Below are positions 1-39,416 of a DNA stretch of 64,000 nt, in pieces. Below the pieces are notes generated by a model, which worked only from the letters and a program-made list of their open reading frames with translations, was not told where the DNA came from and did not search any database. The stretch's first letter is position 1. Each line of letters starts with the position of its first letter. The translations under genes were made by a program, and so were the position numbers. Location of the stretch: contig CATNEN010000033.1 of assembly GCA_950097015.1 (NCBI GenBank), forward strand, positions 3,534,001-3,598,000. The letters are read 5' to 3'. Source of the stretch: Macrostomum hystrix. Taxonomy: Eukaryota; Animalia; Platyhelminthes.

Positions 1-456
1 TGGATAGAGAGGCTGAGATGGATAGAGAATCTGAGATGGATAGAGGCTGAGATGGATAGAGAATCTGAGATGGATAGAGAATCTGAGATGGATAGAGAGG
101 CTGAGATGGATAGAGAGGCTGAGATGGATAGAGAGGCTGAGATGAATAGAGGCTGAGATGAATAGAGGCTGAGATGGATAGAGAGGCTGAGATGAATAGA
201 GGCTGAGATGGATAGAGGCTGAGATGGATAGAGGCTGAGATGAATAGAGGCTGAGATGGATAGAGGCTGAGATGGATAGAGGCTGAGATGAATAGAGGCT
301 GAGATGGATAGAGGCTGAGATGGATAGAGGCTGAGATGGATAGAGGCTGAGATGAATAGAGGCTGAGATGGATAGAGGCTGAGATGGACACAAAGTGGAA
401 GAGTGGGACAAAACGGTATAGGGGACAGAGTGAGACAGAGATAGGGAGGAGTAGGA

Positions 457-517
457 TGAATGAACTTCTTGAAGCCCCAATCCTTGCCTTGAATGAAGCG
501 GTAGGCTCGCTGGCTCT
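457..517 (-). pseudogene. SPOP: Truncated copy of SPOP MATH exon 3 (leftmost of 40 copies)
   Basis: Minus strand reads tgttaac-ctttcgctctttgtccggtacag|AG AGC CAG CGA GCC TAC CGC TTC ATT CAA GGC AAG GAT TGG GGC TTC AAG AAG TTC ATT CA, i.e. (E)[19 protein letters not shown], matching human SPOP E118-I137. It then joins intron sequence instead of continuing RRDFLLDE. Confidence 0.93.
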
Positions 518-36405: not shown

Positions 36406-36466
36406 TGAATGAACTTCTTGAAGCCCCAATCCTTGCCTTGAATGAAGCGGTAGGCTCGCTGGCTCT
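36406..36466 (-). pseudogene. SPOP: Truncated copy of SPOP exon 3 (proximal copy, first acceptor met after exon 2)
   Basis: Identical acceptor and 61-nt exon fragment. Phase 1 matches the exon 2 donor (ATG G|AG AGC = M-E-S). Confidence 0.93.
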
Positions 36467-39416
36467 CTGTACCGGACAAAGAGCGAAAGGTTAACAATTA
36501 AAATCGGAAGTTATTTACTATTTGTACTTTCTATCTAGTAATAAGGGATCCGAGTGAGACTGAAATTAAGATTGAGAGAGACTGGGAATGAGATTGAAAG
36601 ACTGAGACTGGAGTTGAGAGAGTGAGACTGTGGTTGACAGAAAGAGATGGATAGAGAGACTGAGATGGATAGAGGCTGAGATGGATAGAGAATCTGAGAT
36701 AGATAGAGGCTGAGATGGATAGAGAGGCTGAGATGGATAGAGAATCTGAGATGGATAGAGGCTGAGATGGATAGAGAATCTGAGATGGATAGAGAATCTG
36801 AGATGGATAAAGGCTAAGATGGATAGAGAGGCTGAGATGGATAGAGAGGCTGAGATGGATAGAGAGGCTGAGATGGATAGAGAGGCTGAGATGGATAGAG
36901 AGGCTGAGATGAATAGAGGCTGAGATGGATAGAGGCTGAGATGGATAGAGGCTGAGATGAATAGAGGCTGAGATGGATAGAGGCTGAGATGGATAGAGGC
37001 TGAGATGAATAGAGGCTGAGATGGATAGAGGCTGAGATGGATAGAGGCTGAGATGGATAGAGGCTGAGATGAATAGAGGCTGAGATGGATAGAGGCTGAG
37101 ATGGATAGAGGCTGAGATGAATAGAGGCTGAGATGGATAGAGGCTGAGATGGATAGAGGCTGAGATGAATAGAGAATCTGAGATGGATAGAGGCTAAGAT
37201 GGATAGAGGCTGAGATGGATAGAGAGGCTGAGATGGATAGAGGCTGAGATGGATAGAGAGACTGAGATGGATAGAGGCTGAGATGGATAAAGGAAGAGAT
37301 GGATAGAGAATCTGAGATGGATAGAGAATCTGAGATGGATAGAGAATCTGAGATGGATAGAGAGGCTGAGATGGATAGAGGCTGAGATGGATAGAGAGGC
37401 TGAGATGGATAGAGAGGCTGAGATGGATAGAGAGGCTGAGATGGATGGAGAGGCTGAGATGAATAGAGGCTGAGATGGATAGAGAGACTGAGATGGATAG
37501 AGAGACTGAGATGGATAGAGGCTGAGATGAATAGAGGCTGAGATGGATAGAGAGACTGAGATGGATAGAGGCTAAGATGGATAGAGGCTGAGATGGATAG
37601 AGAGGCTGAGATGGATAGAGGCTGAGATGGATAGAGAGACTGAAATGGATAGAGGCTGAGATGGATAGAGGCTGAGATGGATAAAGGCTGAGATGGATAG
37701 AGAATCTGAGATGGATAGAGAATCTGAGATGGATAGAGGCTGAGATGGATAGAGAATCTGAGATGGATAGAGGCTGAGATGGATAGAGAGGCTGAGATGG
37801 ATAGAGGCTGAGATGGATAGAGAGACTGAGATGGATAGAGGCTGAGATGGATAGAGGCTGAGATGGATAAAGGCTGAGATGGATAGAGAATCTGAGATGG
37901 ATAGAGAATCTGAGATGGATAGAGAATCTGAGATGGATAGAGAGGCTGAGATGGATAGAGGCTGAGATGGATAGAGAGGCTGAGATGGATAGAGAGGCTG
38001 AGATGGATAGAGAGGCTGAGATGGATAGAGAGGCTGAGATGGATAGAGAGGCTGAGATGAATAGAGGCTGAGATGGATAGAGAGACTGAGATGGATAGAG
38101 AGACTGAGATGGATAGAGGCTGAGATGAATAGAGGCTGAGATGGATAGAGAGACTGAGATGGATAGAGGCTGAGATGGATAGAGGCTGAGATGGATAGAG
38201 AGGCTGAGATGGATAGAGGCTGAGATGGATAGAGAGACTGAGATGGATAGAGGCTGAGATGGATAGAGGCTGAGATGGATAAAGGCTGAGATGGATAGAG
38301 AATCTGAGATGGATAGAGAATCTGAGATGGATAGAGAATCTGAGATGGATAGAGAGGCTGAGATGGATAGAGGCTGAGATGGATAGAGAGGCTGAGATGG
38401 ATAGAGAGGCTGAGATGGATAGAGAGGCTGAGATGGATAGAGAGGCTGAGATGGATAGAGAGGCTGAGATGAATAGAGGCTGAGATGGATAGAGAGACTG
38501 AGATGGATAGAGAGACTGAGATGGATAGAGGCTGAGATGAATAGAGGCTGAGATGGATAGAGAGACTGAGATGGATAGAGGCTAAGATGGATAGAGGCTG
38601 AGATGGATAGAGAGGCTGAGATGGATAGAGGCTGAGATGAATAGAGGCTGAGATGGATAGAGAGGCTGAGATGGATAGAGAGGCTGAGATGGATAGAGAG
38701 GCTGAGATGAATAGAGGCTGAGATGGATAGAGAGACTGAGATGGATAGAGAGACTGAGATGGATAGAGGCTGAGATGAATAGAGGCTGAGATGGATAGAG
38801 AGACTGAGATGGATAGAGGCTGAGATGGATAGAGGCTGAGATGGATAGAGAGACTGAGATGGATAGAGGCTGAGATGAATAGAGGCTGAGATGGATAGAG
38901 AGACTGAGATGGATAGAGGCTGAGATGAATAGAGGCTGAGATGGATAGAGAGACTGAGATGGATAGAGAGGCTGAGATGGATAGAGGCTGAGATGGATAG
39001 AGGCTGAGATGGATAGAGGCTGAGATGGATAGAGAGACTGAGATGGATAGAGGCTGAGATGGATAGAGGCTGAGATGGATAGAGAGACTGAGATGGATAG
39101 AGGCTGAGATGGATAGAGGCTGAGATGGATAGAGAGACTGAGATGGATAGAGGCTGAGATGAATAGAGGCTGAGATGGATAGAGAGACTGAGATGGATAG
39201 AGGCTGAGATGGATAGAGGCTGAGATGGACACAAAGTGGAAGAGTGGGACAAAACGGTATAGGGGACAGAGTGAGACAGAGATAGGGAGGAGTAGGAAAG
39301 TCTACAAAGAGATGGACTTTGATAGCCTCAACAATACTACTGCTGCAAAACAATCAGAAGTAGAGTGCAGAACATATTTGCAGCAAAATGACACAGACGG
39401 GCGCAAAGCGGCTCAC

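What the first reader, a model, noticed from the sequence alone, without database searches (positions are those of the whole stretch)
1..39416. SPOP intron turned into a 39-kb array of 40 decoy 3' splice sites, each carrying a truncated copy of the next exon
Seen: after the exon 2 donor (39417) come 119 nt of unique intron, then a sequence that recurs in every unit. Each unit ends in a consensus branch point (TGTTAAC), pyrimidine tract and CAG, followed by 59-61 nt of the in-phase next exon, fused back to intron position ~120. So one segment (intron 2 nt ~120 to exon 3 nt ~61) was tandemly amplified at least 40 times. No GTRAG-like donor follows the fragments, and the junction is AG|AG rather than the AG|GT of recursive splicing. 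Known: this exon holds the substrate-binding residues of SPOP (Y123, F125, W131, F133 in human numbering). Inference: a functional gene must skip 40 or more identical acceptors to reach the complete exon, which would need strict exon definition. Otherwise this allele or paralog has been inactivated by a satellite born from its own exon junction.
Basis: partly seen in the sequence, partly recalled or inferred. Interest (0 to 1): 0.9.

Follow-up and report, generated by a model that had tools for sequence, protein, structure and literature searches.

The report
Amplified splice acceptors inside SPOP intron
An intron of an expressed SPOP gene, probably from a macrostomid flatworm, holds a real tandem array of over 39 kb whose units each repeat the intron's own 3' splice site plus the first 59 bases of the next exon; this makes it an unusual natural test of how splicing picks one acceptor among dozens of identical ones.

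Summary
On the minus strand, exon 2 of a SPOP/roadkill ortholog (39571-39417) is followed by 119 nt of unique intron. Then come 40 head-to-tail units of 644-2891 bp, and the array runs off the window's left edge. Each unit holds a 70-nt head (intron nt ~120 onward), a CT-rich 16-18-nt minisatellite, the intron tail with branch site, pyrimidine tract and CAG, and 59 nt of exon 3.

- **Copy number:** in a DNA run the junction words are about 35 times deeper than the unique flanks, so the high copy number does not depend on the assembly.
- **Expression:** RNA contigs from three runs join exon 1 to exon 2, and exon 2 to the first AG of the repeated acceptor. The gene is expressed.
- **Complete exon 3:** I could not read it because it lies outside the window. 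The DNA word graph shows a second continuation right after fragment nt 59, as a complete exon predicts.
- **Decoy use:** this is unresolved. One RNA run carries the fragment unbroken into the array junction, at a depth above exon 2's. Another shows no such contig.

Best reading: a young, non-adaptive intragenic tandem amplification whose acceptors compete with the real one. An earlier scan note (s1-319825) reports the same array continuing in the neighbouring window.

The parts
43180..43592 (-). Exon 1 of the SPOP/roadkill ortholog, coding part. The likely ATG is at 43424 (MLDSTNN...). The start of the MATH domain is here. The donor is CTG|GTGAGT, with 43180 the last exon base.
   Evidence: ORF and sequence. 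It is 74% identical to M. lignano P0173 over 81 aa. It matches Pfam MATH_2 profile positions 1-30, below the curated cut-off. RNA contigs carry its 3' end joined to exon 2.
39572..43179 (-). Intron 1 (3.6 kb). It holds two further minisatellites that are CT-rich on the gene strand: 40194-40953 (23-nt unit) and 41781-43140 (24-nt unit).
   Evidence: The exon boundaries come from RNA contigs and the sequence.
39417..39571 (-). Exon 2 (155 nt), encoding [13 protein letters not shown]...KREDNKAM plus the first base of the next codon. The donor is TGG|GTGAGC.
   Evidence: Translation. Pfam MATH_2 profile 34-85, E 4.8e-10. RNA contigs from X2, X4 and X9 cover 39417-39572 with no mismatch and run on at both ends into exon 1 and exon 3 sequence.
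39298..39416 (-). The unique first 119 nt of intron 2, with single-copy depth in DNA.
   Evidence: One search gives the unit start at intron nt 121. X1 depth here is 70.9.
1..39297 (-). Tandem array of 40 units, cut by the window edge. Each unit is a head (70 nt), a CT-rich 16-18-nt minisatellite block (332-2580 nt), the intron tail (about 180-225 nt) and a 59-nt exon-3 fragment. Units fall into 14 minisatellite block types and 3 tail types, arranged in a higher-order pattern.
   Evidence: The k-mer depth is about 35 times that of the flanks.
36408..36466 (-). First copy of the exon-3 fragment (59 nt), used here as the example. The other 39 copies run down to 459-517.
36467..36496 (-). Example of the copied 3' splice site: TGTTAAC branch motif (36496-36490), pyrimidine tract, and CAG (AG at 36468-36467).
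   Evidence: The RNA junction uses this first AG (loose ends).
36514..36519 (-). AGTAAA, present once per unit, 51 nt before the AG and followed by a TTTTAATTGTT stretch. It overlaps the weak donor-like ATA|GTAAAT. It is a candidate weak poly(A) signal that could close a unit as a terminal exon.
   Evidence: One search finds 40 AGTAAA and no AATAAA or ATTAAA. This is a hypothesis only.
35400..35458 (-). Variant fragment with G>A at 35449 (Arg>Gln codon). Its twin lies at 15380-15438 (15429), 20,020 bp away, and marks a large block duplication inside the array.
   Evidence: The two blocks are 99.3% identical over 4.3 kb.

Best explanation
This is a real and probably recent tandem amplification inside intron 2 of an expressed SPOP/roadkill ortholog. 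The closest named relatives of the host are Macrostomum flatworms.

**Origin (inferred).** A first tandem duplication had one breakpoint at intron nt ~120 and the other at exon 3 nt 59, joined with 2 filler bases. Unequal crossing-over then multiplied it. The CT-rich minisatellite inside the duplicated segment probably helped. The outcome is a higher-order array of 40 units in the window and, by an unchecked scan note, at least 10 more beyond its edge.

**Position of the real exon (inferred).** A tandem duplication of this kind leaves the gene collinear. Only the last copy is followed by the rest of exon 3 and its donor.

**How it works (partly shown, partly inferred).** The array has no evolved function. 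It acts as a set of exact competitor 3' splice sites. Productive mRNA needs the exon 2 donor to pair with the final acceptor, the only one that exon definition can complete. Pairing with a donor-less copy gives dead-end or prematurely ended RNA. This allele is therefore most likely a working but weakened (hypomorphic) SPOP gene, with both outcomes occurring.

**Status of each step.** Shown: the structure, the high copy number, transcription, and use of the exon 2 donor with the repeated acceptor. Inferred: the origin, the complete exon 3 at the far end, and the mixed splicing outcome.
For: **Structure**
- 40 in-register copies with identical acceptor and fragment.
- The head of every unit equals the unique intron from nt 121 on, so the origin is local.

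**Real rather than an assembler loop**
- The units form 14 x 3 types in an irregular higher-order order.
- Two large blocks 20 kb apart are 99.3% identical over 4.3 kb, not 100%.
- In DNA run X1 the junction contig has depth 2467 against 70.9 for the unique intron and exon 2.

**Expression**
- Contigs of X2 (depth 18.7), X4 (14.5) and X9 (4.3) cover exon 2 exactly.
- They continue into the exon 1 3' end on one side and AGAGCCAGCGAGCC... on the other.

**Complete exon 3**
- X1's junction contig is 62 nt long: 30 nt of head, 2 junction bases and 30 nt of fragment.
- A word graph built from the window alone predicts 81 nt.
- The X1 DNA must therefore hold another sequence that shares the end of the fragment and departs right after nt 59.
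- Relatives continue KKFI-RRDFLMDE (P0173; L001).

**Intact coding sequence**
- Exons 1 and 2 have no stop or frameshift and are 74% and 90% identical to M. lignano.

**No internal-exon definition for the copies**
- No donor above 3.4 bits lies in any unit.

**Some decoy or unspliced array RNA exists**
- The 160-nt contig of X4 runs from the fragment's first base through the junction into the head without a break.
- Its depth is 25.9.
Against: - **Exon 3 unseen:** the complete exon 3 lies outside the window. Searches for this species' own protein or contigs found nothing.
- **X4 topology:** in X4 the fragment-to-array contig shows no branch where productive mRNA should leave. Productive splicing may be minor in that sample, which would favour a stronger loss of function.
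- **X2 disagrees:** X2 shows no array-junction contig at all, which would favour clean skipping. The tool warns that a missing contig proves nothing.
- **Alternative cause of the 62-nt limit:** a variant at fragment nt 29 in units outside the window would give the same contig boundary.
- **Unit identity may be overstated:** short-read polishing of a long-read assembly can make repeat units look more alike than they are.
- **X1 is not independent:** it may be the very sample the window was assembled from.
Confidence: 0.55

Rival explanations
1. Clean skipping. The gene is fully functional. All of the 50 or more donor-less copies are ignored because only the last acceptor is followed by a 5' splice site (strict exon definition). 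The array RNA seen is only unspliced intron, amplified by copy number.
For: - The copies have no usable donor.
- Exon 2-spliced RNA has a healthy depth in several runs.
- X2 shows no array-junction contig.
- X4's junction depth of 25.9, spread over about 35-50 copies, is about 0.5-0.7 per copy, or 4-5% of exon depth. That is a normal pre-mRNA level.
- Any long intron holds many unused acceptor-like sites. This one has about 1,540.
Against: - X4's contig passes from the fragment into the array with no branch where the productive path should leave at similar depth.
- The copies are exact, including the branch site and 59 nt of exon, unlike ordinary pseudo-sites.
- The first copy is transcribed about 43 kb before the real acceptor.
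- Macrostomum introns average about 0.6-0.7 kb (PMC10468722), which suggests pairing across short introns is the norm.
Confidence: 0.2
2. Capture by terminal exons. Each unit acts as an alternative last exon: an authentic acceptor, an open frame, a stop codon in the tail, then AGUAAA plus a U-rich stretch. Most transcripts would end inside the array and encode SPOP cut within the MATH domain, after the residue equivalent to human I137. The allele would be a strong hypomorph or a null.
For: - AGTAAA occurs once per unit, and no other poly(A) hexamer occurs in the array.
- AGUAAA is a known low-frequency poly(A) signal (PMC12421377).
- The frame after each fragment stays open for 182-405 codons in total and stops in the tail, before the AGTAAA. 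Such RNA would escape nonsense-mediated decay.
- In X4 the junction depth (25.9) roughly equals exon 2 depth (14.5) plus a pre-mRNA share. That is about one junction per spliced transcript, with no productive branch in the contig.
Against: - No poly(A)-tailed read was seen, and none could be looked for.
- X2 lacks the junction contig.
- The open frame follows from the composition of the strand, which is 72% pyrimidine.
- SPOP is highly conserved, and no second copy of exon 2 is visible in DNA depth. A null allele would be costly unless it is confined to an inbred laboratory line.
Confidence: 0.15
3. Assembly artefact. The array is much shorter in the animal, and the assembler or polishing step inflated it.
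For: - Many units are 100% identical.
- The k-mer ratio of about 35 is lower than the 50 or more copies implied by the window plus the neighbouring-window note.
Against: - The depth ratio of 34-35 to 1 in short-word contigs does not depend on the assembly path.
- The unit order is irregular, and the large blocks differ by 13 substitutions and 9 gaps.
- A pooled or heterozygous sample with arrays of unequal length explains 35 against 50.
Confidence: 0.05
4. Evolved regulatory device. The copies are kept by selection to slow or gate removal of intron 2, as decoy exons do in intron detention, or to soak up the spliced leader.
For: - Decoy splice sites are known to hold introns back (PMC6097662, PMC7373989).
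- Macrostomum trans-splices about 20% of its genes (PMC10468722).
- Unchecked scan notes report signs of spliced-leader use and another amplified acceptor in this genome.
Against: - The near-identity of the units argues for recent expansion, not long-term maintenance.
- A related flatworm-like contig has no intron at this position at all (L001), so nothing here is conserved.
- Decoy exons need both splice sites, and these copies lack the donor.
Confidence: 0.05

Closest known systems
Decoy exons that cause intron detention (SF3B1 intron 4, OGT; PMC6097662, PMC7373989)
   Same: Both are non-productive splice sites inside an intron that can engage the intron's own terminal sites and compete with its removal.
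   Different: Decoy exons carry both a 3' and a 5' splice site, occur as single conserved elements, and are regulated. Here there are 40-50 or more exact copies of the authentic acceptor, with no donor, no conservation and a recent origin.
Satellite-filled giant introns, such as the Drosophila Y-linked fertility genes (PMC8248703, abstract seen)
   Same: A long tandem array sits inside an intron of an expressed gene and must be transcribed through and spliced across.
   Different: Those arrays are simple satellites or transposons without authentic splice signals. Here the unit is built from the gene's own intron-exon boundary.
Intragenic copy-number-variable exon repeats and partial tandem duplications, such as LPA kringle IV-2 and KMT2A-PTD (own knowledge)
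   Same: Both involve tandem duplication of a gene segment by unequal exchange. Copy number probably varies, and the gene stays collinear.
   Different: Those repeats hold whole exons with both splice sites, and every copy enters the mRNA in frame. Here the breakpoint lies inside the exon, so the copies cannot be internal exons.
Recursive splice sites (ratchet points) in long introns (own knowledge)
   Same: Both are intronic acceptors placed between a donor and a distant exon in a very long intron.
   Different: A ratchet point regenerates a donor (AG|GTRAGT). Here the junction is CAG|AGAGCC, and splicing to it would leave no new donor.
Tandem clusters of mutually exclusive exons, Dscam type (own knowledge)
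   Same: Both are tandem copies of an exon's 5' part, each with its own acceptor, downstream of a single donor.
   Different: Dscam variants are complete, diverged exons with donors and RNA pairing elements. These copies are truncated and identical, and the strand is too pyrimidine-rich to form selector pairings.

Membership tests
SPOP / roadkill (MATH-BTB adaptor) gene | N-terminal MATH domain with the conserved substrate-groove sequence | tested here: met
   Exon 2 matches Pfam MATH_2 at 40.2 bits, above the cut-off of 32. Exon 1 matches profile positions 1-30. Identity to M. lignano P0173 is 74% and 90%. The fragment reads [20 protein letters not shown].
SPOP / roadkill (MATH-BTB adaptor) gene | BTB and BACK domains downstream in the same gene | not testable with these tools
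   The downstream exons lie beyond the window's left edge. This species' own protein and contigs were not found.
Macrosatellite / higher-order tandem array | Head-to-tail units of hundreds of bp with high identity and a higher-order pattern | tested here: met
   There are 40 units of 644-2891 bp. Whole units recur identically (965 bp nine times, 748 bp seven times). A block repeat lies at a 20,020-bp offset.
Macrosatellite / higher-order tandem array | High copy number supported by data other than the assembly | tested here: met
   The word depth in X1 is 2467 for the junction against 70.9 for the unique flank.
Macrosatellite / higher-order tandem array | Copy-number variation between haplotypes or individuals | tested here: inconclusive
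   The k-mer ratio of about 35 differs from the 50 or more assembled copies. X2 and X4 also differ in whether junction RNA is present. No per-haplotype sizing was possible.
Decoy exon (intron detention) | An intronic 3' splice site able to engage the spliceosome | tested here: met
   Each copy is an exact copy of the acceptor that the RNA junction uses.
Decoy exon (intron detention) | A paired 5' splice site that bounds the decoy | tested here: not met
   The best donor-like site in a unit scores 3.4 bits and lies 0.6-1.6 kb after the fragment. The real donors score 7.0 and 10.6 bits.
Decoy exon (intron detention) | Retention of the host intron in stable nuclear RNA | tested here: inconclusive
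   Array-junction RNA is present in X4 at depth 25.9 but not seen in X2. The unique intron part has zero contig depth in all the RNA runs.
Recursive splice site | AG directly followed by a GTRAGT-like donor | tested here: not met
   The junction is CAG|AGAGCC in all 40 copies.
Mutually exclusive exon cluster | Each tandem copy is a complete exon with its own donor, and the copies differ in sequence | tested here: not met
   The copies stop at exon nt 59, have no donor, and 38 of the 40 are identical.
Composite terminal exon / intronic polyadenylation site | An acceptor followed by a poly(A) signal with a downstream U/GU-rich element | tested here: inconclusive
   Only the weak variant AGTAAA is present, once per unit, followed by TTTTAATTGTT. 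There is no AATAAA or ATTAAA. Use of this signal in this species is unknown.
Composite terminal exon / intronic polyadenylation site | Poly(A)-tailed transcripts ending there | not tested

The most novel reading that the evidence does not exclude
The array sets SPOP dosage through its copy number. Each of the 50 or more exact acceptor copies can capture the exon 2 donor, or a spliced leader, and close as a terminal exon at AGUAAA. That would yield a stable mRNA for SPOP cut inside its substrate-binding groove. Only transcripts that escape every copy reach the real exon about 46 kb away. Array length, which changes quickly by unequal exchange, would then tune SPOP output in a short-intron, trans-splicing animal.
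Probability: 0.15. Interest if true: 0.75.

Novelty: new variant of a known kind. Interest (0 to 1): 0.55.

Why it matters
How a donor finds its correct acceptor across a long intron is usually studied with designed minigenes. This allele places dozens of perfect copies of the authentic branch site, pyrimidine tract, AG and 59 nt of exon between the donor and the real acceptor. The only feature the copies lack is the downstream donor. Counting how many transcripts reach the real exon would measure directly how far exon definition, first-come-first-served pairing and terminal-exon definition each decide acceptor choice. The animal's introns are normally about 0.6 kb and it also trans-splices. 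The array also shows how a satellite can arise from a gene's own exon boundary. It may be a fast-mutating hypomorphic allele of a conserved ubiquitin-ligase adaptor, perhaps fixed in an inbred laboratory line.

Tried and rejected

2. **This species' own complete exon 3 or protein.**
   - A region-limited search with a decoy reading frame found only other species' SPOP genes.
   - A search with M. lignano P0173 found no further macrostomid proteins.
   - A representative search with exon 1 gave only distant relatives.
   - Exact look-ups of window reading frames and of P0173 found nothing on record. The genome is not in that collection.

3. **Earlier scan notes.** No note describes the downstream exons.

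4. **Known RNA families.** Rfam found none in the window.

5. **Readings considered and rejected.**
   - Recursive splicing: there is no GT after the AG.
   - A Dscam-type exon cluster: the copies have no donors and do not differ.
   - A coding role for the long open frames through the array: all three frames are open because the strand is 72% pyrimidine with 8% G.
   - A captured gene fragment inside a transposon: the head and tail of the unit are the local intron itself.
   - Removal of the 52-nt GTAAAT...CAG stretch as a mini-intron: the donor is weak and no evidence supports it.
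Full report
**1. What is in the sequence**

The gene runs on the minus strand. An open frame at 43592-43180 ends in the start of a MATH domain (...[32 protein letters not shown]) and stops at a strong donor, CTG|GTGAGT. 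Exon 2 is 39571-39417 and encodes [13 protein letters not shown]...KREDNKAM. It matches Pfam MATH_2 above the curated cut-off and ends in TGG|GTGAGC.

After 119 nt of unique intron, a sequence begins (CCTACTCC..., window 39296) that recurs in every unit of a tandem array filling 39297-1. Each unit has four parts:
- a 70-nt head;
- a block of a CT-rich 16-18-nt minisatellite, 332-2580 nt long;
- an intron tail of about 180-225 nt that ends in TGTTAAC, a pyrimidine tract and CAG;
- 59 nt that read, in phase with exon 2, as [20 protein letters not shown].

There are exactly 40 fragments. Thirty-eight are identical and two carry one G>A change. The fragment joins the next head through two extra bases (TTCATT-CA-TCCTACTCC). 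The window edge cuts the array. An unchecked scan note on the neighbouring window (s1-319825) reports at least 10 more units over about 6.4 kb.

**2. Is the array real?**

The units are not a simple loop. Fourteen minisatellite block types and three tail types are arranged irregularly, with some whole units repeated exactly. Two blocks 20,020 bp apart are 99.3% identical over 4.3 kb, with 13 substitutions and 9 gaps.

A DNA run of the same organism (X1) gives independent support. Its short-word contigs have depth 70.9-73.5 over exon 2, the unique intron and intron 1. The head contig has depth 2407 and the fragment-to-head junction contig 2467, a ratio of about 34-35. This depth is not an exact copy number, and X1 may be the sample that was assembled. 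It does not depend on the assembly path, though, and it rules out a handful of copies.

The gap between about 35 and 50 or more could reflect unequal haplotypes or a pooled sample. X1 also shows a 28:54 two-allele bubble in intron 1.

One caveat applies to the perfect identity of the units. It may be partly produced by short-read polishing, so the conclusion that the array is very young is softer than it looks.

**3. Whose gene is it?**

The closest named proteins come from Macrostomum lignano.
- P0173 shares the unusual N-terminus (MLDSTN..., SRPGSP) and [17 protein letters not shown].
- All 20 fragment residues match P0173, including the rare RFIQ.
- The tyrosine-recombinase (Crypton-like) reading frame at 56430-57653 has its best named hits in M. 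lignano.

I therefore treat the host as a macrostomid flatworm or a close relative. This is an inference, because the organism names are coded.

In Macrostomum genomes the mean intron is about 0.56-0.69 kb, about 20% of genes are SL trans-spliced, and the assemblies came from pools of inbred worms (PMC10468722). An intron of roughly 46 kb is therefore extreme for such a genome.

The intron position itself is old. Genomic reading frames from vertebrates read through an intron at the same KAM|ESQ point (P0153, P0156, P0157). A flatworm-like relative (contig L001) has exons 2 and 3 fused, with no intron there.

**4. Is the gene expressed, and where does exon 2 splice?**

RNA-type contigs from three runs cover 39417-39572 without a mismatch: X2 at depth 18.7, X4 at 14.5, and X9 of a second, coded organism at 4.3. 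On one side they run into the last bases of exon 1. On the other they run into AGAGCCAGCGAGCCTACCGCTTCATTCAA. Four further runs hold exon 2.

The locus is therefore transcribed. Both introns' donors are used, and exon 2 is joined to the first AG of the repeated acceptor. The contigs stop 29 nt into the fragment. That is where a 31-mer graph must break if the fragment also has an intronic predecessor. They cannot show whether the acceptor used was a copy or the real one.

**5. Is there a complete exon 3?**

I could not read it. Two lines of evidence favour it.
- **Topology.** A tandem duplication with breakpoints in the intron and in the exon leaves the last copy continuous with the rest of the exon.
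- **The DNA word graph.** The X1 junction contig is exactly 62 nt: 30 nt of head, 2 junction bases and 30 nt of fragment. A 31-mer graph built from the window alone predicts an 81-nt unitig, limited only by the G>A variant. The extra break means the X1 DNA holds another sequence that shares the last 30 or more bases of the fragment and departs immediately after TTCATT with a base other than C. A complete exon continuing with an AGR arginine codon (KKFI-R...) would give exactly this.

A variant at fragment nt 29 in unseen units would give the same break, but it would have to fall on that one position.

**6. Are the copies used?**

This is unresolved, and the two informative runs disagree.
- **X4.** A 160-nt contig starts at the base before the fragment. 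It runs through all 59 nt and the junction into the head and minisatellite without a break, at depth 25.9 against 14.5 for exon 2. If most exon 2-spliced RNA left the fragment for a real exon, the graph should branch at nt 59, and it does not. The depth equals exon 2 plus an intronic share of about 11. This fits one array junction per spliced transcript, meaning capture by a copy followed by early termination. It could also be amplified pre-mRNA (about 0.5-0.7 per copy) if the productive path was lost during contig clean-up.
- **X2.** No array-junction contig was laid, although exon 2 is deeper there. The tool warns that a hole proves nothing.

Genotype differences between samples are also possible.

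**7. What the units could do**

- **Not an internal exon.** No donor above 3.4 bits exists in a unit. The only donor-like site is ATA|GTAAAT, 51 nt before the next AG. A copy therefore cannot be defined as an internal exon.
- **Not a recursive site.** The junction is CAG|AGAGCC.
- **Possibly a terminal exon.** The array has no AATAAA or ATTAAA. It has one AGTAAA per unit, followed by a U-rich stretch. AGUAAA is a known weak poly(A) signal (PMC12421377). The frame after each fragment stays open and stops in the tail before that hexamer. A unit could therefore serve as a terminal exon, giving a stable mRNA for a SPOP cut inside the MATH groove. That open frame is itself only a composition effect: the strand is 72% pyrimidine with 8% G.
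- **Many other pseudo-sites.** The same composition gives about 1,540 further pyrimidine-tract+YAG motifs and hundreds of CUCUCU-type motifs. Acceptor-like sequence is everywhere in this intron. What sets the 40 copies apart is that they are exact.

**8. Verdict**

The locus is an expressed SPOP ortholog, not a silent relic.

The most likely account is a recent, non-adaptive intragenic amplification that turns the intron into a field of competing authentic acceptors. Productive splicing goes to the last one, and some transcripts are lost to the copies.

I give this account 0.55. The alternatives are clean skipping (0.2), terminal-exon capture with strong loss of function (0.15), an assembly artefact (0.05) and an evolved regulatory device (0.05).

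It is a new variant of known kinds: an intronic macrosatellite, a partial tandem duplication, and decoy splice sites. It is not a new category. Its main value is as a natural splicing experiment, and read-level RNA data plus the next 10 kb of the contig would settle it.

Noticed in passing
window 40194-40953 and 41781-43140: Intron 1 of the same gene holds two more long minisatellites: a 23-nt unit with about 33 copies and a 116-nt higher order, and a 24-nt unit with about 56 copies. Both are CT-rich on the gene strand. The gene's introns seem prone to pyrimidine-rich minisatellite growth.
   Followed up: no
window 44920-45211: A 19-nt tandem repeat (15.4 copies, 97% identical) lies about 1.3 kb upstream of the first SPOP exon.
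   Followed up: no
window 39587-39739: DNA run X1 shows two alleles here at depths 28 and 54. They differ by 6 substitutions and 1 insertion in 153 nt. This suggests residual heterozygosity or a pooled sample with a 1:2 ratio.
   Followed up: partly
window 52000-64000: A cluster of tyrosine-recombinase (Crypton-like) reading frames lies here, with a 311-aa ATG-initiated reading frame that I took by eye to be a mariner-type transposase (55302-56237, not checked by any search) nested among them. The 407-aa frame at 56430-57653 is 51-59% identical to Macrostomum lignano and unnamed Logan proteins. Other scan notes already cover this cluster.
   Followed up: partly
L001 2349-2675: A flatworm-like relative (ENA contig) has SPOP exons 2 and 3 fused in one reading frame. 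The ancient intron at KAM|ESQ was lost in that lineage, and its whole SPOP gene fits in about 2.2 kb.
   Followed up: partly
window 43180-43424: Compared with M. lignano and L001, this SPOP has roughly twice as many changes at otherwise conserved MATH positions. Examples are WCY>WCC and several K>R. The changes are mostly conservative, and there is no stop or frameshift. It could mean a greater evolutionary distance or relaxed constraint.
   Followed up: partly
same genome, about 1.04 Mb before the window (scan note s1-319819): An unchecked note reports another splice acceptor amplified 11-fold as a short repeat in an EAG channel gene. Acceptor-containing repeats may recur in this genome.
   Followed up: no
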